Positions 12,937 to 62,117 of a stretch of DNA of 64,000 nucleotides are shown here, in pieces (positions within the stretch are counted from its first letter, which is position 1; the number at the start of each line of letters is the position of its first letter). The translations under genes were made by a program, and so were the position numbers. The notes beneath the pieces were generated by a model that worked only from the letters and a program-made list of their open reading frames with translations, ran no database searches and was not told the DNA's origin. The DNA lies in IMG/VR virus record IMGVR_UViG_3300046653_000093, positions 1-64,000 of that record. One strand, given 5' to 3'.

Positions 12937-13389
12937 ATGCCTATCGAACCAAATCCTTTTGATGACGAACGCCTTGCAAAGATTAGAGCTGAGCAAGGAG
13001 ACCCTCTAATTCAATACTACATCGTAAGAACTGACTTGAACATGAGCGCAGGAAAGATGGGAGCCCAAATAGCTCACGGCGCTCAGATGTTCGTTATACG
13101 ATCTGGAACTCTGGCAGAACGTCACAAAAACGATATGACTCCACTGAAGCCAGAGTATGAAGAGATCTTGGGGGTTGTGGCAGAGTGGATGAATGGAAGT
13201 TTCCGCAAGGTTGTGCTCGGCGGCAAGAAGAAGGACTTCGAGAAGATCATTGCTGAGCTGCGGGTCTTCCTCGTGCGCGATGCCGGCCTGACCGAAGTGG
13301 AGCCCAACTCCGAGACAGTGTTGGTGACATGGCCAATTAGGCGATCTGAATGTCCTAAAATATTGAAAAGACTTCAAACTCTAAAGTAA
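12937..13389 (+). CDS. peptidyl-tRNA hydrolase, PTH2 family
   Basis: IVRTDLNMSAGKMGAQIAHG, KVVL, VRDAGLTEV. Confidence 0.9.
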   Translation: MPIEPNPFDDERLAKIRAEQGDPLIQYYIVRTDLNMSAGKMGAQIAHGAQMFVIRSGTLAERHKNDMTPLKPEYEEILGVVAEWMNGSFRKVVLGGKKKDFEKIIAELRVFLVRDAGLTEVEPNSETVLVTWPIRRSECPKILKRLQTLK

Positions 13390-34734: not shown

Positions 34735-34741
34735 TATTTAT

Positions 34742-34820: not shown

Positions 34821-34857
34821 AGATATATGCAGTACAAACCGGAAGTACTAAATATAC

Positions 34858-35231: not shown

Positions 35232-35354
35232 GGTTGAGAATCTGAAGCGCGGCTTGCGAAGGGCACGGCGCAGGTTTTCAAAGAAGCTGATTGAGATAGA
35301 GTTGAAAGATGTGGCACCAAAAGCACATCATAGATAATGGCCGCGTAACTCAAT

Positions 35355-35430
35355 GTTCCTGTAGCACAATGAATGGTGCAGTTTCCTCCTAAGAAAACGG
35401 TTGTGAGTTTAAATCTCACCAGGAACGCCA
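35355..35430 (+). tRNA. tRNA-Arg(CCT)
   Basis: loop CTCCTAA; GCCA end. Confidence 0.8.
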
Positions 35431-35463
35431 ATATAGTCGAGAAACTTAATTCGCAGTTCAATA

Positions 35464-35964
35464 TGAGTGAATCATAGGAGAGCTGTGAATAAATGGACAA
35501 AAGAAGAATTCGAAGACGCAGTAGTAAAAAGCAAAAGCATCAAAGAAGTATTTCTACGTTTAGGAAATTCTACCACTGGATATAATACTTTCCACAGATA
35601 CAAAAAGCTATATAAAATTGATACATCTCATTTATGTGGACAAATACTTGCTGGGAAAAACCAAAAGGGGCGAGTCCATCAACGGCCACTAAGCGAGATT
35701 TTAATCAAAGATGGCACTTCCCTAAAGATCAGATTGATTAAAGAAGGTCTGTTAGAAAACAAATGCAAAATCTGCGGTATAGACAGCTGGGATGGTAAAC
35801 CATTGACTCTGCAATTAGATCATATCAATGGAGATCACTGGGACCACAGAATAGAAAACCTTAGGATACTGTGTCCAAATTGTCATACTCAAACAGACAC
35901 ATATGCAAATAAAAAAGGAAGTAATAAGAAACCTCTAAGACGTGTAAATGCGGTTGTGATATAA
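35464..35964 (+). CDS. HNH homing endonuclease; Zn/HTH tail continues in another frame to about 36167
   Basis: CKICG..LQLDHINGDHWDHRIENLRILCPNCH. Confidence 0.88.
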
Positions 35965-36144
35965 CATATCACTCAAGCACATGCAGAAAATGCCGGCAAG
36001 GAAATAAAAAGATCATTTGGCCAAGTTTAGAGTTCCTGGAAAAGTCCATACAAAACAGTAACTATTCATTTGTAGCCAAACAGCTTGGAGTGTCTGATAA
36101 TGCTATAAGAAAACACCTACAAAAATTAGGTGTTGAAGTTGTGA

Positions 36145-36217
36145 GCCCCTATAGTATAACGGAATAGAACAAGACCCTACGAAGGTTGAGATACAGGTTC
36201 AAATCCTGTTGGGGGTA
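36145..36217 (+). tRNA. tRNA-Arg(ACG)
   Basis: loop CTACGAA. Confidence 0.8.
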
Positions 36218-36218
36218 C

Positions 36219-36290
36219 TATCCTGTAGCTCAATGGTAGAGTGCCTCCCCGACTAGGAGGAAGTCGTCAGTTCGAACCTGACCAGGATAA
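36219..36290 (+). tRNA. tRNA-Val(GAC), atypical loop
   Basis: CCTCC-CCGACTA-GGAGG. Confidence 0.7.
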
Positions 36291-36297
36291 CTAACAT

Positions 36298-36368
36298 GGG
36301 CACTTAGTTAAATGGTAGAACGCCTCTTTTACACGGAGAAGATAACAGTTCGATTCTGTTAGAGCCTA
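36298..36368 (+). tRNA. tRNA-Val(TAC)
   Basis: loop TTTACAC. Confidence 0.78.
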
Positions 36369-36380
36369 CAAAGATTTCAT

Positions 36381-36451
36381 GGGCCATTAAGTCAATGGAA
36401 GACTCGCAGACTTTTAATCTGTAAACATCAGTTCGATCCTGATATGGCCTA
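36381..36451 (+). tRNA. tRNA-Lys(TTT)
   Basis: GCAGA-CTTTTAA-TCTGT. Confidence 0.85.
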
Positions 36452-36455
36452 CTAT

Positions 36456-36526
36456 AGAGGTATAAGTCAACGGTAGACTAGCGGTCTCTTAAACCGTCTA
36501 TGAGAGTTCGATTCTCTCTACCTCTA
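36456..36526 (+). tRNA. tRNA-Lys(CTT)
   Basis: GCGGT-CTCTTAA-ACCGT. Confidence 0.87.
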
Positions 36527-36829
36527 CTCATAAAAATGGTCGAGAAGTATCCATATATTATACTTAATATATGGATACTAAATAGCAAATTACACAAATT
36601 AGGAATTGATTGGAGTCATTATTCATTACCAACTCAATTGGTAAAATGACGGTAGTTCGTAAAGGAGATAGAATAATCAAAATAGGAGCGTCGGTCCGGT
36701 TAAGGCTCGTGAGGGTTTCCCTCCACACTCACGAAGTATCATCGTCCAATAACAACCCTGGATTCGTCCTGGACTTGTAGGATCAGGTTAAGTGCCGAGA
36801 TGGAAGACAATCTCCCTAATACTTCTTAT

Positions 36830-36901
36830 AGACCATTGGTGTAACGGTAACACAGCTGCCTCCAAAACAGTTAGATGCGGGTTCGAATCCTGTGTGGTCT
36901 G
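36830..36901 (+). tRNA. tRNA-Trp(CCA)
   Basis: loop CTCCAAA. Confidence 0.83.
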
Positions 36902-37198
36902 CAAGATAAATATGTAACCAAATACTCTTTGGTAAAACATAGATATATAACTAAACATGCTTACTAAAGAAGAACGCAAAGCAGAATTCTTAAGATTGAT
37001 GGAAGTTACATCTGATTTAGAATGTACTTTCTTAGCTGGCAATCCAGATGGTATTAGTATATGCGCTTATTGTGATTGTTGGTGGCATGTTGGTGACATA
37101 CCAAAACATACTTCAGGTTGTAATAGACCAAATCAGGATACGTGAGGTAACATGAATAACATACAAAAACTACAGTAAATCACAAAAGCAGAGATTGG

Positions 37199-37335
37199 TT
37201 GGATGATAGTAAAGAGAATCTTGAGTTCTTGTGTCCAAATTGCCACAGTCAAACAGATGGATGGTGTGGTAGTAAATATGAAATTGAACTTTTTAGTGAA
37301 GTAGAACACTCAAGAAGAGCACGTGTAAGAAGACA
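37199..37335 (+). pseudogene. HNH endonuclease remnant
   Basis: only DDSKENLEFLCPNCHSQT remains. Confidence 0.6.
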
Positions 37336-37337
37336 AT

Positions 37338-37419
37338 GTCAGCGTGGCGTAACGGCAGCCGCAGCAAGCTTAGAACTTGCTGAGTAATACTCGTGGGGGT
37401 TCGACTCCCTCCGCTGACA
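37338..37419 (+). tRNA. tRNA-Leu(TAG)
   Basis: GCAAG-CTTAGAA-CTTGC; long variable arm. Confidence 0.87.
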
Positions 37420-37612
37420 CTATGATAACTTATCTATTAACAAAGATGTTTTATTTTCTATTCAGTGTTTGTGGACCTTTGCGTACAGCCGCTGGAACAG
37501 CAGAACGCAGATTGTATAATGAACATCTTGGTGATATATGGGTATCAAAATATGATGTACAGATGCCAATAATATCGGAAGATGTTACTGAACCTGAATT
37601 AGATATAAAGTC

Positions 37613-37906
37613 ATGATGACAGATTGTCCACTTTGTAGTCGAGAAGTTCCCCACCGGAGCGATCATCATTTGACTCCTCGCTCTCGTGGAGGGAAGGTTA
37701 CACTTCCAATATGTTTAGACTGTCATAAGTCAGTACATGCATTTTTCACAAACAAAGAATTGGAAGATAGATATAATACAGTTGATGCGCTTTTAGGGGA
37801 CGAGAAGTTCGCCAAGCACATCAAATGGTTGAGTAAGCAAGACCCGAACAGGAGATATAGAACTGTAAGGGTTTCCGAAAAGAAACATCGAGGAAGAAGC
37901 GGATGA
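37613..37906 (+). CDS. small HNH-fold protein
   Basis: CPLC..HHLTPRSRGG..CLDCHKSVH..TNKEL. Confidence 0.8.
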   Translation: MMTDCPLCSREVPHRSDHHLTPRSRGGKVTLPICLDCHKSVHAFFTNKELEDRYNTVDALLGDEKFAKHIKWLSKQDPNRRYRTVRVSEKKHRGRSG

Positions 37907-38085
37907 AAGTATACGAGTTAATTGAAAAGCTTTCGGAAATGCCGCAATTAGCAAATGTAAATATTGTGTTCGATACTGGTTTTGCGAGTAGAGATATTGA
38001 AAGCGTTTATATAGATTGGGAGAATGAATATCCTACTATATGTATAGATGAAGGTAAAATGTCTCGGATCGTCTCGGAGTGATAT

Positions 38086-38157
38086 GGGCCTGTCATATAC
38101 GGGTTAGTATGCAATTCTTATAAATTTGACAAGATGGTTCGACTCCATCCAGGCCTA
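38086..38157 (+). tRNA. tRNA-Ile(TAT)
   Basis: loop CTTATAA; body closely resembles the adjacent tRNA-Ile(GAT). Confidence 0.75.
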
Positions 38158-38191
38158 CGCAATCTATCAATAACTTAGCAGATACATATTA

Positions 38192-38263
38192 CGGTCTATC
38201 ATATAATGGTTAGTATGCAAGTCTGATACACTTGTCACGATGGTTCGAGTCCATCTAGACCGA
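38192..38263 (+). tRNA. tRNA-Ile(GAT)
   Basis: CAAGT-CTGATAC-ACTTG. Confidence 0.85.
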
Positions 38264-38386
38264 CTGGGTAACGCGAAAAATAGTTCGGTTCTTGTCTTGT
38301 TCATGTGTGTTTCTTTCGTTTCTGGGTTCGTGACTTGTTGATTTGGTTTTCGCGTTACCCTTTTCTTTGCCCCCATCTTCTAACGG

Positions 38387-38959
38387 CTAGGAGTGATTTA
38401 GAGTAGCTAAGTGACACTTTTTGCATCTATTAGCATCTGGAGATATTTTTCGGTTACACTGCTCGCAGCGATGGTGATTTACTTTACCCTTCCTACCAGA
38501 AAACGTAGGCGTCTGAGTATGGCAATTGGGACATAATATCCTTAGATTTTCTAATCTGTTATCATCATGATCTCCGCTTATATGGTCTAGTTGCAACACT
38601 AACGGCTCTCCATTCCATTCATTACCTTGGCCGCATTTGAAGCATTTATCATCAAAAATATTGGAACTGATGAGCCGATCTTTCAATACTTGAGAATTTA
38701 CCTTAATTCCATTTTGCAAATACTCTGATATATCTTTTTTAGGACCAAACTTTCGGTTTCTGTTCGAGGCCAATCCCAACGTTATATGACCATAGCTGAT
38801 TTCATCTTCAATCAATCTTCTCTTGAGGGTTTTGTAGTTTCCGCTTCCAATCCCGAAATGTTCTAGAATCTCAGCTAAACTCTTGCAGGCATTGACAATT
38901 TCTTGAAATTTTTCAGTAGTAGGTTTATATATTACACTAGTCTTTTTTCGGTTTACCAT
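38387..38959 (-). CDS. HNH homing endonuclease, antisense within the tRNA array
   Basis: CFKCG..LQLDHISGDHDDNRLENLRILCPNCH. Confidence 0.9.
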   Translation of the reverse strand: MVNRKKTSVIYKPTTEKFQEIVNACKSLAEILEHFGIGSGNYKTLKRRLIEDEISYGHITLGLASNRNRKFGPKKDISEYLQNGIKVNSQVLKDRLISSNIFDDKCFKCGQGNEWNGEPLVLQLDHISGDHDDNRLENLRILCPNCHTQTPTFSGRKGKVNHHRCEQCNRKISPDANRCKKCHLATLNHS

Positions 38960-39002
38960 ATAAGGACATATATCAATATACATAGATGTCCTTAGATAAT
39001 TC

Positions 39003-39073
39003 GGCTCCATCTTCTAATGGCAGGATGACGCTCTCTCTAAGCGCCAATGCGAGTTCAAATCTCGCTGGAGTCA
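39003..39073 (+). tRNA. tRNA-Glu(CTC)
   Basis: CGCT-CTCTCTA-AGCG; Glu-type D-arm. Confidence 0.75.
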
Positions 39074-39074
39074 C

Positions 39075-39160
39075 TGCGGGAATGTAGTGCAAAGGCGGCA
39101 CACGAGGCTCATAACCTCGTCCGAAAGGCGCGATAGGTTCGATTCCATCTCCCGCTACCA
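39075..39160 (+). tRNA. tRNA-Met(CAT), initiator-like, with long variable arm
   Basis: CGAGG-CTCATAA-CCTCG; unpaired 1:72; ACCA end. Confidence 0.75.
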
Positions 39161-39380
39161 AATGGAAACGTTCAGACCAGGCGTATATAGTTGGTCAAAG
39201 AAGTGTGCAACCAAAACAAGTAACCGAAAACGCGCTGAATGGTACTTGTATAAGAAGGAACATAAGTCGCATTACCATCAACGTATTCGGCAAATAGGAG
39301 ATTCAGATTACCACTACGATTTTGATGGAGACTACGATCTCTTTGGTTGGTATGATATTCAGTGTGGAGATCATTAGTAT

Positions 39381-39455
39381 GTCGTGGAACCCAAAAGGCT
39401 AGGGGCCTGTCTGCAAAACAGGTATTTGTGAGTTCGACACTCACCCACGACTCCA
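39381..39455 (+). tRNA. tRNA-Cys(GCA)
   Basis: CCTGT-CTGCAAA-ACAGG; U73-CCA. Confidence 0.85.
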
Positions 39456-39457
39456 AT

Positions 39458-40138
39458 ATGGCAGCTAATTTAGGCACTAGAAAATCATGGACTGACGAGC
39501 AAATGTCAAAGGCAGTAGCTCAAGCACTTTCAATAGCCAGCACACTTAGGTTATTGAATATGTCACAAACTGGAGCTAATTATATAACAGTAAAAGATGC
39601 TATAAATCGACTAAGCCTAAACACTTCACATTGGACAGGGATTCATCATAGGAAGGGAAAGGCGTTAATTAATCCAAAGAAATCACTATCTGAATTATTG
39701 ACTGAAAACTCACGAACACAAACATCGCGTCTAAAACATCGACTCATAAAAGAAGGTCTGCTTACCAATCAATGCTCCGTATGTTGTCAAGAGCCTAGTT
39801 GGAAAGACAAGCCTCTGGTAATGGTGTTAGATCATATAAACGGAATAAATAATGATTTTAGATTTGAAAACCTAAGATTACTTTGCCCTAATTGCAACAG
39901 CCAGCAATCAACATTCGCTGGTAGGAACAATAAAAGTAAAAGAGGGCCAGGTCATTTTTGCAATAACTGCAATAGAAAATTAACAGCACTTAGAAAATCT
40001 GGTATGTGTAATGTTTGTAACAATAAATCCAGATCAAAATCAAGCCAAGGTGATGGAATGGCAGACATGGTAGCCCCAAACACTACTGCCGCAAGGCGTG
40101 AGGGTTCGACTCCCTCTCTTGGCACTTATGATAATTAG
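39458..40138 (+). CDS. HNH homing endonuclease
   Basis: CSVC..VLDHINGINNDFRFENLRLLCPNCN; frame runs through the downstream tRNA-Leu. Confidence 0.88.
   Translation: MAANLGTRKSWTDEQMSKAVAQALSIASTLRLLNMSQTGANYITVKDAINRLSLNTSHWTGIHHRKGKALINPKKSLSELLTENSRTQTSRLKHRLIKEGLLTNQCSVCCQEPSWKDKPLVMVLDHINGINNDFRFENLRLLCPNCNSQQSTFAGRNNKSKRGPGHFCNNCNRKLTALRKSGMCNVCNNKSRSKSSQGDGMADMVAPNTTAARREGSTPSLGTYDN
40044..40124 (+). tRNA. tRNA-Leu(CAA)
   Basis: loop CCCAAAC; variable arm GCC-GCAA-GGC. Confidence 0.78.
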
Positions 40139-40411: not shown

Positions 40412-40702
40412 GCTTCAATTTTTCTTGCAATCGCTACCGAGATTTGTTAGGGTGGCAAAGTCATCCGGCCGCTTCGCGGTTGGAACCCTACTATCAATCG
40501 GGTGAAGCTGACGCCCAGCCAACCAATCAGTGGTGCTTACACGGCCCCATATAGATCCCATAGTTACGCGCTCCTTTCACAGCCCCATTAACTCGGTTGG
40601 CTGGGCGTTATTTACGAAGTACTCAATTGAATACATGAACAAAATCGAATAGTTGCTTCATGTCAAACAACATCTAGACAAGAGATGTTGTTTTGGGGTA
40701 TA

Positions 40703-41227
40703 ATGACCTACATGGATCCGAAGCTATTCTCAGTTGCCGCCCTGATTCCAATCGGCAATCAGGTTGTTGCCGTTTCTCGTAAGACCAACCACAATGACTT
40801 CGGTCTGCCGGGAGGTAAAATCGATCCTGGCGAGACTCCGGAAGAAGCTCTCGTGCGCGAGCTTCACGAAGAAACCGGTATCACCGCAACCAAATTCAGT
40901 GTTGTCTACGAAGATTGGGACCGCGTAGAAGGTGGTGAACCGCGCCCATGCCGAACGTATCTGATCGAAAAATGGGAAGGCACTCCGCAAGCCACTAAAG
41001 AGAGCGCAGTAGTGACGTTGCTTTACCCAAAGCAATTGATGAATCCAAGCAATACTTTCTGCAACTACAATTACAATCTGTTCAATCATCTGTCAAAAGA
41101 AGCAAGCTTTCGTAAAAAGCTAATTGAAATAGCGAGTCTATATGACGATGATGAAACAGATCCTAATATAGAAATTACTCGCGTTGATATACCAAGATCA
41201 AATCCATCTTGGCCAGTTCCAACATAA
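40703..41227 (+). CDS. Nudix hydrolase
   Basis: GLPGGKIDPGETPEEALVRELHEETG. Confidence 0.92.
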   Translation: MTYMDPKLFSVAALIPIGNQVVAVSRKTNHNDFGLPGGKIDPGETPEEALVRELHEETGITATKFSVVYEDWDRVEGGEPRPCRTYLIEKWEGTPQATKESAVVTLLYPKQLMNPSNTFCNYNYNLFNHLSKEASFRKKLIEIASLYDDDETDPNIEITRVDIPRSNPSWPVPT

Positions 41228-44658: not shown

Positions 44659-45015
44659 AGTATCCCCTTATTTAAGAGTGAAGGTTATTGTAAAAGATTT
44701 GGTAATTGAATATGTGATTTTCTCTTCCGCTGTCCACTTGGCAAGCCATCTATCTAATCTATTCAATAAATATGTTTTAGCTACCGAATTATCATCAATA
44801 GTTGATAAGCTTATACCGTTTTCTGGTACATCACCTATATCAACATAAAAAGTATATGAGAGATCTTTGCATGGATCTTTTATAGTATAATACCTTACTC
44901 TTTTTTGTAAAGCAGTAATACATGACTAAAAATGCAAGTCTATTGACTTGATTATAGCATCAGTTGCATTTTTATATCTTGCTTGATTATCTTCGCCAAT
45001 AGTCATTTGATCACC

Positions 45016-47235: not shown

Positions 47236-49861
47236 ATAGCCAACGAAGATAGCCGTAGGGATAGGGATATAGTGCTCGCACCAAACGAGTACATGTACGT
47301 TAGCGATCAAACCAAGGGAAACATTGACGTTTTCGTTGGTCCCACCAAGCAGAGTTTGTCGGGAACTGATCAGCCCGTAATTTTTGATGACAAGTCAAAA
47401 CGATTTATTCCGGCCGAGACGCAAGATCAGGCAAAGCAATTGAGTAAGACAGCCCCCGAAGGCTGGTATATTGTTTTGAAAAATCCGGCGCAGAACGGAA
47501 AGCAACCTACTGCAAATTCCGGAAAATTGTCCAGCGCAGATTTGGACGTGGGCAAGAAAGTCATCGTACCAGGCCCGGTTACATTCTGTCTGTGGCCAGG
47601 TCAAATGGCCAAGATACTCAAGGGCCATCACCTTCGTTCCAATCAATACCTGCTATGATGAGTACGAGGCTCACCAGAATTGGAAGAAGGCTGTTGTCAA
47701 GGCAGTTGCCCCAACTGATGCAGTGAAGGCCGACCCCGCTACCTGCAAGATAGGGGAGCTGGCTGATTCTCCACCACCTCCACCGCTTACCCTGCCCGAT
47801 CCTCCAAACTTGACAATGGGTCAAGTGATCGTGATCAAGGGTACTGACGTTTCATTCTACATTCCGCCAACTGGTGTTGAAGTTGTTCCAGATGACGATG
47901 GCCAACTGGTCCGAGAGGCTGTCACACTTGAACGTCTCGAATACTGCTTGCTGATGGATGAGCAGGGAACCAAACGATACGAGCGCGGCCCCGCCGTTGT
48001 CTTCCCAGAGCCCACCGAAGTGTTCATCACTCGTGAAGGTCAAGATGGAGAGCCTGTTCGCAAGTTCCGCGCAATCGAACTGAGCGAAAACTCTGGCATC
48101 TACATCAAGGTTATTGCCGAGTACACAGATAACAAGACTGTGCATAAGGTTGGCGAAGAGCTGTTCATTACCGGGAAAGACAAGATGATCTATTTCCCGC
48201 GTGAAGAGCACGCCATCGTCAAGTACGAGAATCGCGAGATTCATTATGCAATCGCGATTCCTGCCGGCGAAGCGCGGTACGTTCTCGATCGCAACAAGGG
48301 TACTGTTTCCTTGGTTGTTGGTCCAAAGATGTACCTTCCAGATCCTAGAAACGAAGTTATCGTTCGAAGAATCCTTCCATACAAGACCTGCAGCTTGCTG
48401 TACCCGGACAACACCACCGCCTTTGCTCACAACGCTAGGTTGGCCGGTGTTGATCTTGATACATACATGAGCCATCAGGGCGCTGAGGCGGTTAGTGCGG
48501 CAGTGGCAAACGCTCCTGCGGCAGCGATGAACTTCCTAGCTGCGACGATGGATTACGAATCTTCGCATGTGATGTCTCGTTCGATTGGCAGCACAGAGAC
48601 TTCGCGCGGGCTTGGCACAAAGGCTGGGACAAAAGCAGCTGGCGATGCATTCCAACGCAAGACCAAGTACACCGAGCCTCGTTCAATTGTGCTTTCAACC
48701 AAGTACGATGGTGCGGTTGCCATCAATGTCTATACCGGCTACGCAGTTATGCTGGTTAAATCGGATGGTTCACGGCGCGTTGTCGAAGGACCGCAGACCG
48801 TTCTGCTCGATTATGATGAGACTCCTGAAATTCTTGAGTTGTCTACTGGTAAGCCGAAGACGACGGACAATCTGTTCCGCACCGCCTATCTGCGCACCAT
48901 GGCAAACAAGATTGGTGACATCATCGAAGTTGATACGAGTGACTTCTGCAAGTTCCAGTTGAAGCTATCCTATCGAATGGACTTTACTGGCACGCCAGAG
49001 TCTTGGTTTGGCGTAGAGAACTACGTCAAGTTCTTGTGCGATAATCTTCGCTCGCGTCTCAAGAATGCTGTTCGCAAGCACGGCGTTGAAGACTTCTACA
49101 AGAACAGCACTGACATCATCCGTTCTGCAGTTCTCAAAGAAGCAACTGATGGTAGCTTTGGCCCACGGCTATTCCCAGAGAATGGAATGCAGATTTATGA
49201 CGTCGAGGTTCTCAAGGTCAGCCTTGTCAATGACGACATTGAGAAACTGATCGCGCAATCGCAGAAGGCAATCATCCAGACCACGATTGCTCTGGCCAAC
49301 CAGAAGAGAACTCTGGAAGCTGGTATTCAAGAAGAAGACATCAAGCAGCAAATGGCCGAGGTCAAAGCCAAGACCAATGCTCGAATTTTTGAGCTGGAAG
49401 CCGAGGAGGCTAAGCGCAAGCAGGAGTCTCAAACAGTTGTCATCGAAGCGCAATCCGAAACGACAGCTCTCAAGCTCACCAAAGAACTCGAAGCCCAGCA
49501 GTCAAAGAACGCAGTGTCACTTGAAGCGCGCAAGAATGAGCAAGCGATTGCTGATTTCGAACTCGCTCAAGAGAAGCAACGACTCGACCTCAAGATCGCT
49601 ATGATCCAGGCCGAGATTGAAGCTATCGTCAAGAAGTCCGGCGCAATCACGCCAGACCTCATCTCTGCTCTTCAAGCCTTCGGAGATAAGGATCTTGTGC
49701 TCAAGGCTGCCGAAGCGATGGCTCCTCTGTCCATCATTGGTGGTTCAAGCATTGGCGATGTTCTTTCGCGGTTGCTTGCTGGAACTAAACTTGAGAGCAT
49801 TGCCAAGCTAGCTACAAGCAATGGAGCTAGCAACGGAGCTTCTCAAAGCGCTCACCGATAA
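47236..49861 (+). pseudogene. major vault protein (MVP)-like gene split by one frameshift near 47654
   Basis: repeated beta modules ending GP/GEE; SPFH-like shoulder YVKFLCDNLRSRLKNAVRKHGVEDFYKNSTDIIRSAVL; FPENGMQIYDVEV; long cap helix; AGGAG SD before ATA at 47236. Confidence 0.78.
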
Positions 49862-51812: not shown

Positions 51813-52172
51813 ATAGCTGATACCAAAAAAGTGGCATACTAATCATCCGGAAATTCCAGATAGCTGGTAATATCTTTATATCTTATTAATCAGATGGAGA
51901 TATGTGATGCAAACACTTCCAGGAACAAAGAACACTATTACCAGGATCGCGGAAGCCTCTGAGACTTTCCGTGCTACGGTTGAAAACGTGCAGCTGGATA
52001 AAAAGTGCGCAAAGCCATCAACTGACATTGACAGTCTCCTGAAGATGGCTAGCTTATTTGCAGAGTCAACAATGACGTAGGTTTCTAAATTTCATTGGTC
52101 GAGAGGGCCTCCTGTAATCCGAATAAAACCAACACAAGTTTTATTCGATAGATATTGTTACAGGAGTTTAAT

Positions 52173-52532
52173 ATGGAAAATGAAATTAAGTTTGATGAAG
52201 AAACACGAAAGCTAATCAGGGCGTTCCGCGCTAAGGTTTCTGATGGACAATATGCCAGCAGAGCAACGCTATTAGCGTATTCTTTTCTTAAGCGGCGTCC
52301 TTATGTTGCATTAGAGAAGAAGATCAATGAGGATCATCCTAGCTTTGGGATTGGAAGAGATTCTTTCCTAAGCAATCTGGCATATGATATTGCACACGAG
52401 ATTAATAATTTAGTATTATCAGATACCAATGATGAATTGATTGCGCCGTCTGGTTTAAGAGATGACATTCAGCATTGGATTATGAAGAAGTACGAACCAG
52501 CCGCTGCTATTGCAGAAGAGAAAGCTGCATGA
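52173..52532 (+). CDS. hypothetical protein, first gene of the amber-suppression cassette
   Basis: AGGAG SD; RATLLAYSFLKRRPYVALE; stop overlaps the next start (ATGA). Confidence 0.75.
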   Translation: MENEIKFDEETRKLIRAFRAKVSDGQYASRATLLAYSFLKRRPYVALEKKINEDHPSFGIGRDSFLSNLAYDIAHEINNLVLSDTNDELIAPSGLRDDIQHWIMKKYEPAAAIAEEKAA

Positions 52533-52870
52533 CGTAGATTTCTGAAGGAGATAAACTTTACGTCATTACTAGGTCTGATCTTTCAAAGGGATATCAGGCA
52601 GTTCAATCTATTCATGCACTTCGTTAGTTCGTGAATGATCATCCTGATATAGATAGGGAGTGGTATTCTAAATCAAACTATTTGGGACTTCTTTCTGTCA
52701 AGACCGAGAATGAGCTTTCTGAGTTGTTTAGAAAAGCTTGCCAATATGGCATTAGATGTTCAGTATTTAGAGAACCAGATATTGGTGATCAAATTACAGC
52801 CATCGCCTTGGAACCCGGCCCCATATCCAAAAGGCTTTGTTCCAAGTTACCATTGGCCTTGAAGGATTAA
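52529..52870 (+). CDS. PTH2-like peptidyl-tRNA hydrolase with two in-frame TAG codons
   Basis: MT*ISEGDKLYVITRSDLSKGYQAVQSIHALR*FVNDHP..FREPDIGDQITAIAL; TAG at 52535 and 52625. Confidence 0.8.
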
Positions 52871-52887
52871 CACTTACAGCTTACAAT

Positions 52888-52977
52888 GTGCCCGTCGCTC
52901 AGTGGTCGAGAGCAACAGATTCTAAAACTGTCGCAGCCGAGAGGCTGCCATCGTGGGTTCGACCCCCACCGGGCACA
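52888..52977 (+). tRNA. amber suppressor tRNA (anticodon CTA), class II
   Basis: acceptor GTGCCCG/CGGGCAC; D-stem GCTC/GAGC; ACAGA-TTCTAAA-ACTGT; variable arm GCAGCC-GAGA-GGCTGC; T-arm GTGGG-TTCGACC-CCCAC. Confidence 0.85.
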
Positions 52978-53113
52978 CTATTATGGAACAAGAACCAGAA
53001 GAGCCGGTCCACGAACCTCCACCAAAAGAGCACCCAGATATCGAGCTTGATGGTGGTGGCAAACTTACTTGGTGCGAAATATGTGAATCATATTGGCAAT
53101 GCGGGTGTGGGTA

Positions 53114-54067
53114 ATGCCAAAAAAGATAATTGTAGTTACCAAGAAAACATCTTATTCAAAATACATCCAAGACCAAGATGATGTCGGTTCAAAGGAGTTA
53201 TTGCTAAGTGCAAATCCAGCTGTTGCGTTTTGGAAATCATCTCACAACAGTCATATGAAGACTCTTGATATTGTTGTGTCGGAGATTCAAAAACAGAATT
53301 TTGTCTGCCACGTAATTGATTCTAAATCATTTGTTGCCGAGCCAGATGATGTTGAAATGGTTGTTACTGTTGGAGGAGATGGGACATTACTATCAGCTTC
53401 TCACAACGTAAATAGTGCACTGCCAATTCTTGCAGTCAACTCCGATCCATCAACTAGTGTTGGGTTCTTCTGCTATACAACATCAAATACTTTTCAAAAT
53501 CATTTATCATTAGCATTAGATGGTAAATGTCCCAATACAATTCTAACAAGAATGAGTGTTAGAAAGAATAATAAGATAGTTGCGAATAGAATATTGAATG
53601 ACGTATTGTTCTGTCATACAAATCCAGCGGCAACATCTAACTACATCATTCAATTAATGAGTCGCCGCTCCCTAACTCCAGCGGCTGGAATGTCTGTTGG
53701 ATCGCGCGTTTCTCCGATGTCGCTGCAGGAAACTCAAAGATCAAGCGGAATATGGGTTGGACCTGCAGCGGGTAGTACGGCGGCTAGGCGTTCTGCCGGG
53801 CTTTCGCCGATGGATCTTGAATCTAAAGACTTGCAATTGGGGGTCAGGGAGTTGTACTATAAGCCATCCTCGAAGCCAGGCACACGATTTATGATGGCTG
53901 CCCCAGGGCAATTCATCAAAGTAATTAGCAAGATGGATAGTTCTGCTATGTATCTTGATGGAGATTACAGTGTAATTCCTGTTGGTCTTGGAGATGAAAT
54001 AAACTTCGAGAAATCCGATGACTCTCTGCAACTCTTAGGAAAACCAAATGTATTTTGTGGTAAATAG
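53114..54067 (+). CDS. NAD(+) kinase
   Basis: VTVGGDGTLL, LNDVL, SSGIWVGPAAGSTA, LDG. Confidence 0.9.
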   Translation: MPKKIIVVTKKTSYSKYIQDQDDVGSKELLLSANPAVAFWKSSHNSHMKTLDIVVSEIQKQNFVCHVIDSKSFVAEPDDVEMVVTVGGDGTLLSASHNVNSALPILAVNSDPSTSVGFFCYTTSNTFQNHLSLALDGKCPNTILTRMSVRKNNKIVANRILNDVLFCHTNPAATSNYIIQLMSRRSLTPAAGMSVGSRVSPMSLQETQRSSGIWVGPAAGSTAARRSAGLSPMDLESKDLQLGVRELYYKPSSKPGTRFMMAAPGQFIKVISKMDSSAMYLDGDYSVIPVGLGDEINFEKSDDSLQLLGKPNVFCGK

Positions 54068-54251: not shown

Positions 54252-54728
54252 ATGATTCTTGGAATAACTGGGCACAGACCCAGTGTCTTAGGCTGTGGTT
54301 ACGATATACCAAATCCAACTTATGACCGTATCTGTCAACAGATAAAAGGTGAATTCATCGAGCTAAAACCAGAGAAGATAATTTCTGGTATGGCCCTTGG
54401 GGTAGATCAGTGGGCCGTGAGTATTGCAATGGAACTTGGAATACCTTTCATTGCAGCTGTGCCTTTCAAGGGACAAGACTCACGGTGGCCAGTTAAGAGT
54501 AAAAAGATCTACGAGGATATGTTGGGCTCGGCAGATCGAATAGTCATCATTGGAGAACTTACCTCAAATAACTTTGCCGAACTAATGTTCTTGCGCAATA
54601 GATGGATTGTTGACAACTCATCAGAACTGTTAGCGGTATGGAATGGAGATCGTAAGGGCGGTACATTCTCTGCTATCAATTATGCTGAGAAGAAATCAAA
54701 TTACCATATTCGCGTCATAAAACCATGA
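54252..54728 (+). CDS. SLOG-family protein (YspA/DUF1273-like)
   Basis: ITGHRP, ISGMALGVDQWA, RNRWIVDNS, GGT. Confidence 0.88.
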   Translation: MILGITGHRPSVLGCGYDIPNPTYDRICQQIKGEFIELKPEKIISGMALGVDQWAVSIAMELGIPFIAAVPFKGQDSRWPVKSKKIYEDMLGSADRIVIIGELTSNNFAELMFLRNRWIVDNSSELLAVWNGDRKGGTFSAINYAEKKSNYHIRVIKP

Positions 54729-59969: not shown

Positions 59970-60040
59970 GGGACCGTGGTGAAGAGGGATCACGCAACAC
60001 TGGCAGTGTTGACTCGCGAGTTCGATTCTCGCCGGCTCCA
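59970..60040 (+). tRNA. tRNA-Ala(GGC)
   Basis: CAACA-CTGGCAG-TGTTG; G3:U70. Confidence 0.8.
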
Positions 60041-60240
60041 CAAGGTGCAATATGCATCCTCTTGGAAGTAGAAAAGATCATAGTTTTGATTCTGATGGTC
60101 AAATCAAGGCAACTCGTGGCCGTGCCGCCAATGAAGAGGAAGCCTTGATTCGTGAGCAATTCAATGAATGCCTCGCTTGTGGAAGGCACGAACAACTAGC
60201 ATGCGCTGATTGCCCAGCTCGGCAGATCAAGTAATATTTT

Positions 60241-60312
60241 GCCCCCATAGCTCAATGGAAGAGTGTCTGCCTTCTAAGCAGGTTGTTGAAAGTTCGAATC
60301 TTTCTGGGGGTA
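60241..60312 (+). tRNA. tRNA-Arg(TCT)
   Basis: TCTGC-CTTCTAA-GCAGG. Confidence 0.87.
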
Positions 60313-60324
60313 CTAAGAGGACTA

Positions 60325-60846
60325 ATGATTAGTTACGAAAAAGCAGTCGATATTCAAACTAAAGCCGAGAAGGCGTATGCAAAAGCATCAGCGCAATTGC
60401 AAGAAGCCAATAGTACATTGGAAGCTTTGAAGCGTGAACTTGAAATTGAATGCAGTACTTGTCACAAGACAACAAAGGTTAAGGATATCGAACTAATCGC
60501 TAGAAAGTCAGGAGGATATCAAAGTTACGATCATGGAGAGTGGCAATATAACACTAGGGTATGTTGGGTTTGCAAACATTGCACAACTCCGCAATCACTA
60601 CCCAGTGAAACAGAAGGCCCGTTCGCAAAGAAGCCACCATTTAAATATGGCTTTGATCATTATGTCAAAGCTGTTCATGAGTGGTATTCTGATAACGAAC
60701 GTTGTCACGGGAGAGTTCTGCAATTATTAGGGCCACATCTACAAAGAGAAGAGGATCTTCTGCGCAAGAAAGAAAAGGAAAGAAAAATTGAAGAAGCTAA
60801 AAAATTACTTGCAGACGAGGGTATATTAGGTAATACTGAAGCATAA
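60325..60846 (+). CDS. hypothetical Zn-ribbon/coiled-coil protein
   Basis: GAGG SD; two CxxC. Confidence 0.65.
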   Translation: MISYEKAVDIQTKAEKAYAKASAQLQEANSTLEALKRELEIECSTCHKTTKVKDIELIARKSGGYQSYDHGEWQYNTRVCWVCKHCTTPQSLPSETEGPFAKKPPFKYGFDHYVKAVHEWYSDNERCHGRVLQLLGPHLQREEDLLRKKEKERKIEEAKKLLADEGILGNTEA

Positions 60847-60854
60847 TTTAGAAC

Positions 60855-60932
60855 GCCGATGTAGTTCAATTGGTAGAACGCCAGTTTCATAAGCTGGGTC
60901 TTGTGTGGGTTCGACTCCCTCTATCGGCACCA
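60855..60932 (+). tRNA. tRNA-Met(CAT)
   Basis: CCAGT-TTCATAA-GCTGG; ACCA end. Confidence 0.82.
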
Positions 60933-61425
60933 AATGTTTGACGATCTACTATATAGCCTGACCACCACACGCGAGCCGCTAGCGGCGGCGTGTAGGAATA
61001 GTTATGGCAAATCACAAGCGGCGAAAGCCTAAGAATAGTAGATCTGGATGTTTGATGTGTAAGTATTGGAAGATTAATGGCTTCTCCCCAAAAGAGAAGA
61101 TGAAGTTTTCCGAATACCGAAGATACTCTGATGCTGCGGAACAGATGAAGGACGTCTGATTCTAGCAGAAGGATAGGTAATATGTTTGATACTAGTTAGG
61201 TAACCTTCTCTTCAAAAAGGAGGTGCCTATGCAATATTGCAAATGGTGTGCTCTCGTTCGCGAGCTGAGTAAAGACGAAACTGGCCACAGTAAGGTGGGC
61301 ATGTGCCGTCAATGCTACAGAAAAGAGCACAAGACGGATACGATAGTCGATAGAAAAAGACTAAGAAAATCCAGAAAGTAAGTAAACTGGAACCGAGACG
61401 TTTGTCAACTCAAGCGTCTCGTCAC

Positions 61426-61498
61426 GGGGCTGTAGCTCAACTGGGAGAGCGCTAGACCTGCAATCTAGAGGTTGTCGGTTCGATTCCGATCAGCTCCA
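61426..61498 (+). tRNA. tRNA-Ala(TGC)
   Basis: GGGGCTG acceptor; CTAGA-CCTGCAA-TCTAG. Confidence 0.88.
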
Positions 61499-61503
61499 CT
61501 TAC

Positions 61504-61575
61504 GGGGTCGTGTATAGGGATACAGATTTCCTTTGCAAGGAAATTTTGCGAGTTCAATTCTCGACGGCTCCACCA
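61504..61575 (+). tRNA. tRNA-Ala(TGC), short D-arm
   Basis: TTTCC-TTTGCAA-GGAAA; ACCA end. Confidence 0.72.
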
Positions 61576-61577
61576 AC

Positions 61578-61649
61578 GCTAGCTTTGCGCAATGGTAACG
61601 CACTTGTCTTGTAAACAAGTCCATATCAGTTCGAATCTGATAGCTAGCT
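61578..61649 (+). tRNA. tRNA-Thr(TGT)
   Basis: CTTGT-CTTGTAA-ACAAG. Confidence 0.85.
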
Positions 61650-61655
61650 CTACTT

Positions 61656-61727
61656 GCTGACTTGGTGCTAACGGAAGCATGTCTGTTTCGTAATCAGAAG
61701 GTATCAGTTCAATTCTGATAGTCAGCT
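61656..61727 (+). tRNA. tRNA-Thr(CGT)
   Basis: loop TTCGTAA. Confidence 0.82.
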
Positions 61728-62002
61728 CAACGGATAATTTTGTATTTATATAGGAGTAATAGTTAAGTAATCAAGTCGCTCCAAAGAGGTGATAAATGGT
61801 TACGGTAAAAGAAGCAATCATAAGAGTGGTAGCTGAAAAGCTTCGAGAATATTACCTTCGTGGTATTAGAGATGCCCGCATTGAAGTATCTGAAAACTCA
61901 ATGCCAAGTATTCTTGAAACATTTGATGCTGGAGATTTTGATAATGCATATGATCAACATGTCTGGCTAAAAATAGCAGAGAACATCATAGATATGTAAC
62001 AT

Positions 62003-62073
62003 GCCCATGTAGTATAATGACATTACATTTCCTTGGTAAGGAAAAAAATCTGGTTTGATTCCAGCCTTGGGCT
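62003..62073 (+). tRNA. tRNA-Thr(GGT)
   Basis: TTTCC-TTGGTAA-GGAAA. Confidence 0.75.
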
Positions 62074-62117
62074 CTAATAGTAGTTCGATTCAGAATTCAG
62101 CTGATATATGCCAACGC

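What the first reader, a model, noticed from the sequence alone, without database searches (positions are those of the whole stretch)
52173..52977. Amber-gated cassette: PTH2-like gene with two in-frame TAGs followed by its own amber-suppressor tRNA
Seen: a hypothetical ORF (52173-52532) is coupled by ATGA to a 113-codon frame MT*ISEGDKLYVITRSDLSKGYQAVQSIHALR*FVNDHP...LPLALKD. Its only interruptions are TAG at codons 3 and 33, and it ends in TAA. The PTH2 N-terminal motif (YVITRxDL..G..AVQ..HA) lies between the two TAGs, so the ORF caller saw only the last 79 aa. Seventeen nt after the stop is a full class II tRNA with anticodon CTA, far from both tRNA arrays. TAG is a true stop elsewhere (1214, 6373, 9911, 15895), so the genome is not globally recoded, and an uninterrupted PTH2 exists at 12937. 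Inference: a self-contained circuit in which the hydrolase is made only when amber readthrough is high, for example when suppressor tRNA accumulates or RF1 is inhibited. It could act as a termination-stress sensor or timer, or be a seed for stop-codon reassignment, and the upstream ORF may be an RF1 antagonist or tRNA partner. The inserted residue is unclear: the body looks Tyr/Leu-like (long arm, A73) while the context would suit Gln. This is my best candidate for an undescribed system.
Basis: partly seen in the sequence, partly recalled or inferred. Interest (0 to 1): 0.92.

Follow-up and report, generated by a model that had tools for sequence, protein, structure and literature searches.

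The report
Suppressor-tRNA-gated PTH2-like gene in huge phages
A huge peat-soil phage, like about 80 relatives, starts a small tRNA-hydrolase-like gene with a stop codon and usually places a matching stop-reading tRNA next to it, so the enzyme can probably be made only when that tRNA works.

Summary
At 52529-52870 a PTH2-fold gene has only two interruptions, TAG at codons 3 and 33. A cloverleaf tRNA(CUA) starts 17 nt after its TAA.

The first TAG is not decay. Of 102 distinct family genes from huge-phage contigs:
- 79 begin ATG + 0-5 codons + TAG.
- 2 carry TAA at that site, each with tRNA(UUA) nearby.
- 4 carry an internal TGA; three of those loci hold tRNA(UCA), and the fourth locus is short.
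- 15 are ungated, and most of those have no suppressor nearby.

Shine-Dalgarno motifs sit before the leader ATG. The codon after the stop is usually not a start codon. dN/dS is about 0.11.

The second TAG is specific to the window's lineage (GAG in the nearest relatives). A second gene, 45006-44668 on the minus strand, also carries an in-frame TAG. The 64 kb otherwise uses the standard code.

The tRNA is not Tyr/Leu-like. It has the body of a class-I suppressor with an inserted extra arm.

The upstream ORF belongs to a conserved partner family. An HD-domain gene is a second partner and is fused to the PTH2-like domain in some phages.

Best reading: a translational gate that depends on the suppressor tRNA. 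I found no description of it in the papers searched. There is no experimental evidence.

The parts
52173..52532 (+). Upstream partner gene (119 aa), a member of an orphan helical family with the core motif R..LLAY.FLRG.PY..E. Its TGA overlaps the leader ATG (ATGA).
   Evidence: ORF. The family was found directly upstream of the PTH2-like gene, or upstream of the HD gene, in 51 loci by HMM; alignment A5. No Pfam, PHROG or NCBIfam hit. AF2 mean pLDDT 85, all helical, with no fold match in PDB or AFDB clusters.
52529..52537 (+). Leader and gate: ATG ACG TAG. Translation starts here and meets an amber codon at codon 3.
   Evidence: The same architecture (ATG + 0-5 codons + stop) occurs in 81 of 102 distinct family genes. 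67 of 80 have an SD-like motif (58 strong) 3-18 nt before the leader ATG, and none has a strong SD placed for the codon after the stop.
52529..52870 (+). PTH2-fold gene of 113 codons, read through TAG at 52535-37 and 52625-27, ending in TAA at 52868-70.
   Evidence: Colinear profile hits of both pieces. The family profile hits solved archaeal Pth2 (2zv3, E 5e-10). An AF2 model of the 88%-identical relative L092 has pLDDT 98 and TM 0.75-0.80 to Pth2 structures. dN/dS is 0.11 against L092, with 0 nonsynonymous and 6 synonymous changes between the TAGs.
52625..52627 (+). Second in-frame TAG (codon 33), specific to this lineage, in a TAG-T context.
   Evidence: L092 and L093 have GAG here. The aligned residue in the family is Q 94, E 18, L 6, A 3, T 2. 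Context.
52888..52977 (+). Amber-suppressor tRNA: anticodon CUA at 52922-24, extra arm at 52933-52948 (GCAGCC GAGA GGCTGC), A73, no encoded CCA.
   Evidence: ARAGORN and Rfam. The minimum-free-energy fold is the cloverleaf plus the arm, -39.5 kcal/mol. Without the arm it is 69-72% identical to class-I phage suppressors and at most 59% identical to any tRNA of its own genome. The anticodon stem and extra arm keep pairing against L092 through compensatory changes in the anticodon stem and G-U wobbles in the arm.
44668..45006 (-). A second gene with an in-frame TAG (44928-44926, codon 27). It is a hypothetical protein of 112 codons inside a tightly packed minus-strand operon.
   Evidence: Coding score is high on both sides of the TAG. 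There is no ATG, GTG or TTG for about 50 codons after the TAG. A 115-aa homologue, P0160, spans both pieces without interruption and has Ala at the TAG position.
12937..13389 (+). Uninterrupted canonical PTH2 paralogue. It is not part of the cassette but shows that the gated copy is a diverged second copy.
   Evidence: PF01981 E 6.8e-18. It keeps the GK..AQ and DAG.TE motifs that the gated family has replaced (alignment A1).

Best explanation
This is a translational gate that depends on a suppressor tRNA.

Proposed mechanism:
1. Ribosomes start at the leader ATG (52529). This ATG is coupled to the upstream partner gene by ATGA.
2. Two codons later they meet UAG.
3. If release factor 1 wins, only a dipeptide is released.
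4. If the phage's own tRNA(CUA), encoded 17 nt after the gene and probably on the same transcript, is mature and charged, the ribosome reads on and makes a diverged PTH2-fold protein. That protein is probably a hydrolase of tRNA ester bonds.

The gate lies in the N-terminal tail, before the folded domain. Which amino acid the tRNA inserts therefore does not matter there. In this lineage a second TAG at a variable position of the first helix makes expression depend on readthrough twice.

Shown by sequence and comparison:
- the architecture itself;
- its conservation;
- the match between the kind of stop and the suppressor anticodon;
- purifying selection;
- the PTH2 fold;
- the conserved partner genes.

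Inferred:
- that readthrough actually happens;
- that the amount or timing of the enzyme is thereby tied to suppressor activity, as a feed-forward delay or a feedback on readthrough;
- that the enzyme, together with the HD-domain partner found in relatives, works on tRNA 3' ends or on products of readthrough.
For: - Prevalence. Of 102 distinct family genes from 135 loci, 79 have ATG + 0-5 codons + TAG directly before the domain, 2 have TAA there, 4 have an internal TGA and 15 are ungated.
- Match of stop and anticodon. TAG gates go with cta tRNAs. The two independent TAA gates (L033, sister of TAG-gated L032; L109, inside the window's clade) go with tta tRNAs. The TGA genes go with tca tRNAs (L138, L139, L064; L141 is a short locus without one).
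- Linkage. In loci with full flanks: 36 gated with a suppressor, 6 gated without, 2 ungated with, 7 ungated without. The tRNA lies a median 570 nt away and is downstream in 53 of 55.
- Persistence of the stop. The stop persists while the leader codon before it takes 21 forms and the codon after it 12 forms, at saturated synonymous divergence.
- Start site. SD motifs precede the leader ATG in 67 of 80. None is placed for the codon after the stop. That codon is ATT in 37 and GTT in 17, with AAC, GGG, ACA and others making up the rest, so most are not start codons.
- Internal stops. Further in-frame stops inside the fold occur in several lineages (window codon 33; L050/52/61; L062; L064; L138 clade). 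Only readthrough can rescue these.
- Selection and fold. dN/dS is 0.11, and the PTH2 fold is predicted at pLDDT 98.
- tRNA. It has a canonical cloverleaf, and its stems are kept paired by compensatory changes.
- Standard code elsewhere. TAG ends at least 8 genes in the window, and TAG is not enriched among stops with coding sequence on both sides.
- Sequence reality. An RNA-library contig covers the junction and both TAGs unchanged.
Against: - There is no experiment. Neither readthrough nor charging of this tRNA has been shown.
- The tRNA has an A31.A39 mismatch. About 34 of 77 family suppressors also have a non-Watson-Crick 31:39 pair.
- Six gated loci have no suppressor within 5 kb, and two ungated loci have one.
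- The loci are related to one another. A test on independent pairs for gate versus tRNA presence had no power, with only 3-4 pairs.
- XacN1 carries two CUA suppressors, but its family member is ungated and fused to the HD domain. The gate is therefore not the only reason these phages keep suppressors.
- In cluster C mycobacteriophages a GTG with a well-placed SD follows the TAG, so that variant can start after the stop.
- The second TAG sits in a TAG-T context and could be a recent nonsense mutation that is merely tolerated.
- Genuine TAG terminators in the window are also mostly followed by a purine. The all-purine context of the gates is therefore weak evidence.
- The catalytic Lys of Pth2 is replaced.
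- The metatranscriptome contig may derive from DNA carried into the RNA library.
Confidence: 0.68

Rival explanations
1. Start-stop or mini-ORF coupling. The leader is a tiny upstream ORF whose termination lets ribosomes restart at the next codon. The suppressor tRNA is only a neighbour because the gene sits among tRNA genes.
For: - ATGA overlap with the upstream gene occurs in 34 of 80 gated genes.
- ATT, a weak start codon, follows the stop in 37 of 80.
- In mycobacteriophages Catera and Myrna a GTG with a correctly spaced SD follows ATG-TAG or GTG-TAG.
- The family does sit within tRNA arrays.
Against: - The kind of stop follows the suppressor anticodon in independent switches to TAA and to TGA. 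Restarting would not require this.
- GTT, AAC, AAT, ACA, GGG, GGC, AGT, GTA and GTC follow the stop in about 34 of 80 genes, and none of these is a start codon.
- Internal stops within the fold in several lineages, including codon 33 here, cannot be rescued by restarting.
- No SD is placed for the codon after the stop.
Confidence: 0.1
2. Plain stop-codon reassignment. The phage is on its way to, or already uses, a code in which TAG is a sense codon. The TAGs in this gene are ordinary sense codons with no regulatory meaning.
For: - Phage TAG and TGA recoding with suppressor tRNAs is well known (Borges et al. preprint).
- A second gene in the window has an in-frame TAG.
- The second TAG of the PTH2-like gene is lineage-specific, as expected if in-frame stops accumulate once a suppressor is present.
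- Only 64 kb of a 392-kb genome was seen. Recoded phages concentrate in-frame stops in late genes, which were not sampled.
Against: - TAG ends at least 8 genes in the window. Standard-code ORFs cover 80% of it. Only 3 in-frame TAGs in 2 genes were found.
- In the 10-kb flanks of about 50 relatives, no other gene had a well-supported in-frame stop.
- A neutral sense-like TAG should drift to sense codons. Instead it is held at one start-proximal site across saturated divergence, and it changes only to another stop together with the tRNA.
- No release factor or aminoacyl-tRNA synthetase was found among the window's ORFs of 150 aa or more that were scanned.
Confidence: 0.15
3. Decay. The window's copy is a dying paralogue made redundant by the intact PTH2 at 12937, and its TAGs are nonsense mutations.
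For: - An intact canonical PTH2 exists.
- The second TAG is unique to this lineage and sits in a context that is poor for suppression.
- The catalytic Lys is replaced.
Against: - The first TAG is ancestral and conserved in 79 distinct genes.
- The residues changed from canonical Pth2 are family-wide and themselves invariant (FREPD, with E79 and D81).
- dN/dS is 0.11 on both sides of the second TAG.
- The identical sequence occurs in peat samples from several studies and years.
Confidence: 0.05

Closest known systems
Stop-codon recoding in phages with phage-encoded suppressor tRNAs (Lak, crAss-like and other gut phages; Ivanova 2014, Borges et al., preprint 10.1101/2021.08.26.457843)
   Same: A phage-encoded tRNA with a stop anticodon allows translation of phage genes that contain in-frame stops. 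That work proposes that this delays expression until the tRNA is made.
   Different: In those phages many, mostly late, genes are recoded and the stop is no longer used as a terminator. Here TAG still ends genes. One small gene family carries the stop at one conserved start-proximal site. The tRNA usually lies next to that gene. The kind of stop changes together with the anticodon. The preprint does not mention a hydrolase target.
Xanthomonas jumbo phage XacN1, with two tRNA(CUA) genes (PMC5852040)
   Same: It is a cultured, standard-code jumbo phage. Its suppressor tRNAs are 70-72% identical to the core of the window's tRNA. It also encodes the same PTH2-like domain and HD domain.
   Different: The authors read through 18 annotated amber stops in silico and found no target. 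In XacN1 the two domains are fused in ORF364 and there is no gate.
prfB (release factor 2) autoregulation
   Same: An in-frame stop early in a translation-related gene makes that gene's expression report on the balance between termination and continued decoding.
   Different: prfB continues by a +1 frameshift stimulated by an internal SD, and its product acts on that same stop. Here the frame continues in phase, a dedicated tRNA is needed, and the target of the product is unknown.
Pyrrolysine system (pylT next to methylamine methyltransferase genes with in-frame UAG)
   Same: A dedicated UAG-decoding tRNA gene is clustered with genes that carry a conserved in-frame UAG. ARAGORN labels the window's tRNA 'Pyl' from the anticodon alone.
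   Different: No PylS or PylBCD was seen. The tRNA has ordinary D and T loops and a long extra arm, not the tRNAPyl shape. The UAG lies in a dispensable leader, not at a functional residue.
Archaeal and eukaryotic peptidyl-tRNA hydrolase 2 (Pth2, PF01981; structures 2zv3, 1wn2, 1xty, 1q7s)
   Same: The fold matches (TM 0.75-0.80). The alignment is colinear and keeps the Q..HA helix and an acidic residue at the catalytic Asp position.
   Different: GK..AQ becomes GYQ/GSQ, RDAG.TQ becomes FREPD, and a four-residue loop is missing. The family has its own invariant residues and its own partner genes.
Synthetic suppressor-tRNA feed-forward circuits ('leak dampener', PMC7969014)
   Same: A gene carrying an amber codon is expressed only when a co-expressed suppressor tRNA is present, which gives a threshold and a delay.
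   Different: Those circuits are engineered. This one is natural, and it is conserved in huge-phage contigs from many environments.

Membership tests
PTH2 (PF01981) peptidyl-tRNA hydrolase 2 superfamily | Significant sequence match to the family profile | tested here: met
   The window's 80-aa piece alone scores 20.1 bits, just under the 23-bit cut-off, because the gene is split. Uninterrupted relatives pass: L034 39.9 bits, XacN1 ORF364 25.3 bits. The family profile hits solved Pth2 chains at E 5e-10 to 4e-5.
PTH2 (PF01981) peptidyl-tRNA hydrolase 2 superfamily | Pth2 alpha/beta fold | tested here: met
   AF2 model of L092 (88% identical to the window's protein): pLDDT 98.1. Foldseek hits 2zv3, 1wn2, 3erj, 1xty and 1q7s at TM 0.73-0.80.
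PTH2 (PF01981) peptidyl-tRNA hydrolase 2 superfamily | Catalytic Lys (GK..AQ) and Asp (DAG.T), as defined by mutagenesis of Sulfolobus Pth2 (recalled from the literature, not re-read here) | tested here: not met
   The Lys position is Y or S. The Asp position is an invariant Glu within FREPD. The loop after it is four residues shorter. An acidic residue is retained, so hydrolase activity is possible, but this is not the canonical active site.
PTH2 (PF01981) peptidyl-tRNA hydrolase 2 superfamily | Hydrolysis of peptidyl-tRNA | not testable with these tools
   This needs an enzyme assay.
Genome-wide stop-codon reassignment (TAG as a sense codon) | Many genes broken by the reassigned stop, with low coding density under the standard code | tested here: not met
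   Standard-code ORFs cover 80% of the window. Only 3 in-frame TAGs in 2 genes were found. The flanks of relatives showed no other supported case. Only 64 of 392 kb was examined.
Genome-wide stop-codon reassignment (TAG as a sense codon) | The reassigned codon is no longer used to end genes | tested here: not met
   TAG ends genes at 1214, 5125, 6373, 9911, 15895, 33816, 40138 and 52080. In several cases the next gene's own start follows directly.
Genome-wide stop-codon reassignment (TAG as a sense codon) | Suppressor tRNA with the matching anticodon | tested here: met
   tRNA(CUA) at 52888-52977.
Pyrrolysine decoding system | tRNAPyl architecture (short D loop, 3-nt variable loop, 6-bp anticodon stem; from established knowledge) together with pylS and pylBCD genes | tested here: not met
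   The tRNA has a 4-bp D stem with a 9-nt GG-containing loop, a GTTCGA T loop, a 5-bp anticodon stem and a variable region of about 20 nt that includes a 16-nt hairpin. No synthetase or Pyl biosynthesis domain was found in the ORFs of 150 aa or more that were scanned.
Bacterial class II tRNAs (Leu, Ser, Tyr) | Long variable arm | tested here: met
   A 6-bp stem with a GAGA loop at 52933-52948. Pairing is kept in L092 through G-U wobbles.
Bacterial class II tRNAs (Leu, Ser, Tyr) | Body related to Leu, Ser or Tyr tRNAs | tested here: not met
   Identity to the window's own Tyr and Leu tRNAs is at most about 53%. Without the arm, identity to class-I phage suppressors is 69-72% (XacN1, L092 copy I). 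L102 has the homologous tRNA without the arm. The D stem has 4 bp.
prfB-type autoregulatory recoding site | Early in-frame stop bypassed by a +1 frameshift with an internal SD | tested here: not met
   Protein homology continues in the same frame across both TAGs.
Lambda bar-type minigene | A free-standing 2-4 codon ORF with an SD whose product is peptidyl-tRNA drop-off | tested here: inconclusive
   A 2-4 codon leader with an SD is present. The last sense codon is CTA in 33 of 80. However, the leader is in frame with, and directly abuts, a conserved ORF. Drop-off cannot be tested here.

The most novel reading that the evidence does not exclude
The cassette is a natural controller of stop-codon readthrough. 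A tRNA-ester hydrolase is made only by readthrough, and it acts back on the suppressor tRNA (by deacylating it) or on the by-products of readthrough (peptidyl-tRNAs and stalled ribosomes; a phage tmRNA lies beside it in 18 of 45 gated loci with enough flank). The phage would then hold suppression at a set level while it uses the suppressor for other purposes. The window's lineage would show the next step. An extra arm on the tRNA may change which synthetase charges it, and new in-frame TAGs have appeared in this gene and in a second gene. That would be the start of a code change.
Probability: 0.2. Interest if true: 0.95.

Novelty: new variant of a known kind. Interest (0 to 1): 0.85.

Why it matters
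Suppressor tRNAs are common in huge phages that otherwise use the standard code, and their purpose is unclear. The XacN1 authors looked for targets and found none.

This finding gives a conserved, testable client gene. That client was invisible to gene callers and to 'read past the annotated stop' screens, because the stop lies two to five codons after the start.

If readthrough is confirmed, three things follow:
- It would be a natural example of a gene gated by a dedicated suppressor tRNA outside selenocysteine and pyrrolysine decoding.
- It offers a possible early step on the route to stop-codon reassignment.
- It supplies ready-made orthogonal gate and tRNA pairs (UAG, UAA and UGA versions) for synthetic biology.

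It also means that annotation pipelines truncate or miss this gene family.

Tried and rejected
- Nucleotide search of the cassette against 50,697 phage records: no match.
- XacN1 direct terminal repeat (1-50 kb) and ORF295. The repeat holds the suppressors but no family member. ORF295 is the canonical PTH2, not the gated family.
- Independent-pairs test of gate versus tRNA presence: only 3-4 pairs, so no power. The Fisher p of 4e-4 is not corrected for relatedness and should not be quoted alone.
- All-against-all tblastn for in-frame stops. The raw output was swamped by antisense and off-frame hits. Only sites supported by 6 or more loci at under 85% identity were used.
- Purine after the gate stop (80 of 80) as a sign of selection for suppression. 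This was weakened because 7 of 8 genuine TAG terminators in the window are also followed by a purine. ORFs ending in TAA or TGA are mostly followed by T.
- Search for other mini-ORF + TAG gates in the window: none convincing.
- Fetching the structural region of this genome through the XacN1 portal protein. This returned 65 loci, none from this phage or from the gated-gene contigs, so late genes remain unexamined.
- Function of the upstream ORF: no Pfam, PHROG or NCBIfam family, no PDB or AFDB fold match, and only weak Atlas leads such as DUF7222 at 0.66.
- Identity of the inserted amino acid. Aligned residues (Q, E, K) are simply the one-step neighbours of TAG. Suppressor discriminator bases vary (A 34, G 33, C 7, U 3). 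No call was made.
- Pyrrolysine and frameshift readings were rejected (see the membership tests).
Full report
**What is in the window.**
- ORF 52173-52532 ends in a TGA that overlaps ATG 52529 (ATGA).
- From that ATG the frame reads MT*ISEGDKLYVITRSDLSKGYQAVQSIHALR*FVNDHP...LPLALKD. TAG lies at 52535-37 and 52625-27, and TAA at 52868-70.
- The 29 residues between the TAGs and the 80 residues after them match the same PTH2-type profile colinearly: phrog_1866 positions 7-33 and 45-123; PF01981 for the last piece.
- Seventeen bases after the TAA begins a 90-nt tRNA with anticodon CTA. It scores 53.4 bits against Rfam tRNA, and its minimum-energy fold is a cloverleaf with an extra arm.
- The window corresponds to a 392-kb IMG/VR contig from a peat metagenome.
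- The same letters across both TAGs occur in a second IMG/VR contig, in independent DNA runs, and in a 300-nt contig of a metatranscriptome (52462-52761, no differences).
The RNA contig is only weak evidence of transcription.

**The first TAG is a conserved feature of a large family.**
- Scans of viral and metagenome contigs with an alignment of relatives returned 135 loci, mostly from contigs of 140-500 kb.
- Among 102 distinct gene sequences, 79 have ATG, then 0-5 codons, then TAG, then the domain ([IV]K.GDKLYVITR...). Two have TAA at that site, four have an internal TGA, and 15 have no stop.
- The leader codon before the stop takes 21 forms and the codon after it 12 forms, yet the stop itself stays.
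- An SD-like motif lies 3-18 nt before the leader ATG in 67 of 80 (strong in 58). None has a strong SD placed for the codon after the stop. 34 have the ATGA overlap with the upstream gene.
- The codon after the stop is ATT in 37. It is GTT in 17, and AAC, AAT, ACA, GGG and others in the rest. These cannot start translation.
- The family tree places the TAG gate throughout, with two well-supported ungated clades nested inside.

**The stop matches the neighbouring suppressor.**
- ARAGORN finds a cta tRNA within 5 kb in most TAG-gated loci. It lies a median 570 nt from the gene end and is downstream in 53 of 55.
- The two TAA-gated genes arose independently. L033 is sister to TAG-gated L032, and L109 lies inside the window's clade. 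Each is followed by tta tRNAs.
- The clade with an internal TGA (L138, L139, L141) and L064 go with tca tRNAs, except L141, whose locus is short and holds none.
- L028 has a TAG gate and a tta tRNA. An ochre-type anticodon can read UAG by wobble (established knowledge).
- The ungated clades have no suppressor in their loci.
- Exceptions: six gated loci have no tRNA within 5 kb, and two ungated loci have one.
- The loci are related to each other, and a test on independent pairs had no power. The strongest argument is therefore the repeated joint switch of stop type and anticodon, not the contingency table.

**The second TAG and other in-frame stops.**
- The second TAG is specific to this lineage. 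The nearest relatives, L092 and L093, have GAG there. Across the family the aligned residue is Q 94, E 18, L 6, A 3, T 2.
- It is followed by T. Most internal stops in other lineages are followed by a purine (L050/52 TAG-A, L062 TAG-G, L064 TGA-A); the L138 clade has TGA-C.
- Selection is purifying on both sides. Against L092 there are 0 nonsynonymous and 6 synonymous changes between the TAGs, dN/dS is 0.115 after the second TAG, and 0.11 overall.
- This pairwise value cannot exclude a very recent nonsense mutation on the window's own short branch.

**Is the genome recoded?**
- In the 64 kb, TAG ends at least eight genes. In several cases the next gene's start follows directly.
- TAG is not enriched among stops that have coding sequence on both sides.
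- Standard-code ORFs cover 80% of the window.
- There is one more clear case. The minus-strand gene 45006-44668 has TAG at codon 27, coding signal on both sides, and no start codon for about 50 codons after it. A 115-aa homologue (P0160) spans both pieces and has Ala at that position.
- In the flanks of about 50 relatives, only the PTH2-like gene has well-supported in-frame stops.
- The window therefore uses the standard code with sparse amber clients. Late genes of this genome were not seen, and an attempt to reach them failed.

**The tRNA.**
- Without its 16-nt hairpin, the tRNA is 69-72% identical to class-I suppressors of other phages (XacN1, L092 copy I). It is at most 59% identical to any of the 44 other tRNAs in the window.
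- L102 has the homologous tRNA without the arm. L092 and L093 have a class-I suppressor followed by the long-arm one.
- Between the window and L092, the anticodon stem keeps pairing through compensatory changes, the extra arm keeps pairing through G-U wobbles, and the A31.A39 mismatch is shared.
- Across 77 distinct suppressors the discriminator base varies (A 34, G 33, C 7, U 3), and about 34 have a non-Watson-Crick 31:39 pair.
- The inserted amino acid therefore probably differs between phages. That fits a gate placed in a leader where the residue does not matter.
- Inference: the added arm may recruit a synthetase that ignores the anticodon (Ser or Leu type).

**The protein and its partners.**
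- The family profile hits solved archaeal Pth2 (2zv3, E 5e-10). An AF2 model has pLDDT 98 and TM 0.75-0.80 to Pth2 structures.
- The canonical GK..AQ and RDAG.TQ motifs are replaced by GYQ and an invariant FREPD. An acidic residue is kept at the Asp position, and the Lys is lost.
- The canonical motifs survive in the window's intact paralogue at 12937.
- The upstream ORF belongs to an orphan helical family (core R..LLAY.FLRG.PY..E) found upstream in 51 loci, both gated and ungated. It has no family or fold match.
- In many relatives an HD/HDIG-like gene lies between that ORF and the gate. It is fused to the PTH2-like domain in XacN1 ORF364 (HD first) and in L034 (HD last).
- The HD profile weakly matches a region of the A-adding tRNA nucleotidyltransferase (E 1.5e-3). 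This is a lead towards tRNA 3'-end chemistry and nothing more.
- A phage tmRNA lies within 5 kb in 18 of 45 gated loci that have enough flank.

**Literature.**
- In the searched library I found no description of this gate.
- The XacN1 paper reports two CUA suppressors and no identifiable target after in-silico readthrough of 18 amber stops.
- The Atu_ph07 paper notes a UCA suppressor.
- The phage recoding preprint, a 2026 jumbo-phage survey, the jumbo-phage comparative review, the huge-phage paper and a tRNA-array paper mention suppressors or PTH2, but none links them.
- The search covers open-access papers only.

**Verdict.**
- The finding is real. Its core interpretation, an amber-gated PTH2-like gene served by its own suppressor tRNA, is strongly supported by comparison, though not by experiment.
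- The second TAG, the tRNA identity and the RF1 idea are not supported as written.
- Why the gene is gated remains inference. I favour a coupling of the enzyme's amount or timing to suppressor activity.

Noticed in passing
window 44668-45006 (minus strand): A second gene with an in-frame TAG (44928-44926, codon 27). An uninterrupted 115-aa homologue, P0160, spans both halves and has Ala at the TAG position. The suppressor therefore has at least two client genes in this genome.
   Followed up: yes
window 52072-52080 and 52529-52537: The 9-mer ATGACGTAG occurs twice 450 nt apart: once as the last codons and stop of ORF 51904-52080, and once as the gate. The first copy is also present in L092 and L093. 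I could not tell whether this is chance or a small duplication. The intervening 52084-52150 is conserved and contains an AATAAAAC...GTTTTATT hairpin.
   Followed up: partly
L145 (Myrna gp84) 2970-3540; L146 (Catera gp153) 2980-3690: Cluster C mycobacteriophages have a family member annotated as peptidyl-tRNA hydrolase, preceded by GTG-TAG-GTG or ATG-TAG-GTG. An unusual tRNA that ARAGORN reads as anticodon CTA lies just downstream; it is annotated as Ser or Arg. The SD is spaced for the GTG after the TAG. These are cultured phages in which the gate idea could be tested.
   Followed up: partly
L150 1961-2800 (XacN1 ORF364); L034 4989-5906: The PTH2-like domain is fused to an HD/HDIG-like domain, in either order, in some phages. 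In most relatives the two are adjacent genes. XacN1's copy is ungated although the phage has two CUA suppressors.
   Followed up: partly
L153 (LR756500.1, 462-kb uncultured phage) 3989-5174: It has the same gate (ATG AAG TAG ATT) and a CTA tRNA about 780 nt downstream. A second ATG AAA TAG ATT follows the gene but opens only about 12 codons, so it looks like a remnant copy of the leader.
   Followed up: partly
L019/L090 5381 and 5492: A small frame between the PTH2-like gene and the suppressor tRNA has TAG and TGA aligned to Trp in 9-16 relatives. It may be another readthrough client or an off-frame artefact.
   Followed up: no
window 47723-49861: A 712-aa protein with Major Vault Protein shoulder and repeat domains (PF11978, E 9e-28). 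This is unusual for a phage.
   Followed up: no
window 1851-4646: A serine recombinase with a MerR-type HTH domain, followed by a TnpB/Cas12f-like OrfB_IS605 protein. This is probably an IS605-family element inside the phage genome.
   Followed up: no
window 7907-8785 and 16801-17406: A metallo-beta-lactamase-fold protein matching anti-Pycsar Apyc1 (E 3e-31), and a 2H/LigT-like phosphoesterase with a weak Acb1 match. Both are candidate enzymes for degrading cyclic-nucleotide defence signals.
   Followed up: no
window 20650-25517: A segment with about 50% G+C, against about 42% elsewhere. It holds an ABC transporter set (OmpA-linked binding protein, permease, ATPase) and an AAA/STAND-like ATPase. 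Three consecutive ORFs share one frame and are separated by single TGAs, but they are distinct genes with their own starts.
   Followed up: partly
window 8862-9911, 40685-41227, 53093-54067, 54252-54728: NAD-related and nucleotide-related genes: an NMNAT-like + NUDIX fusion, a NUDIX protein, an NAD kinase directly after the cassette, and a YpsA/SLOG protein.
   Followed up: no
window 28381-40125 and 59970-62074: 45 tRNA genes lie in two arrays, but the 64 kb holds no tRNA-Ser or tRNA-Gly and no tmRNA, whereas many relatives have a tmRNA beside the cassette. A PhoH-PIN protein lies at 14597-15895.
   Followed up: no
window 52983-53114: A 43-aa Cys-rich ORF (..WCEICESYWQCGCG) starts five bases after the suppressor tRNA and overlaps the start of the NAD kinase gene. 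It has no family match.
   Followed up: no
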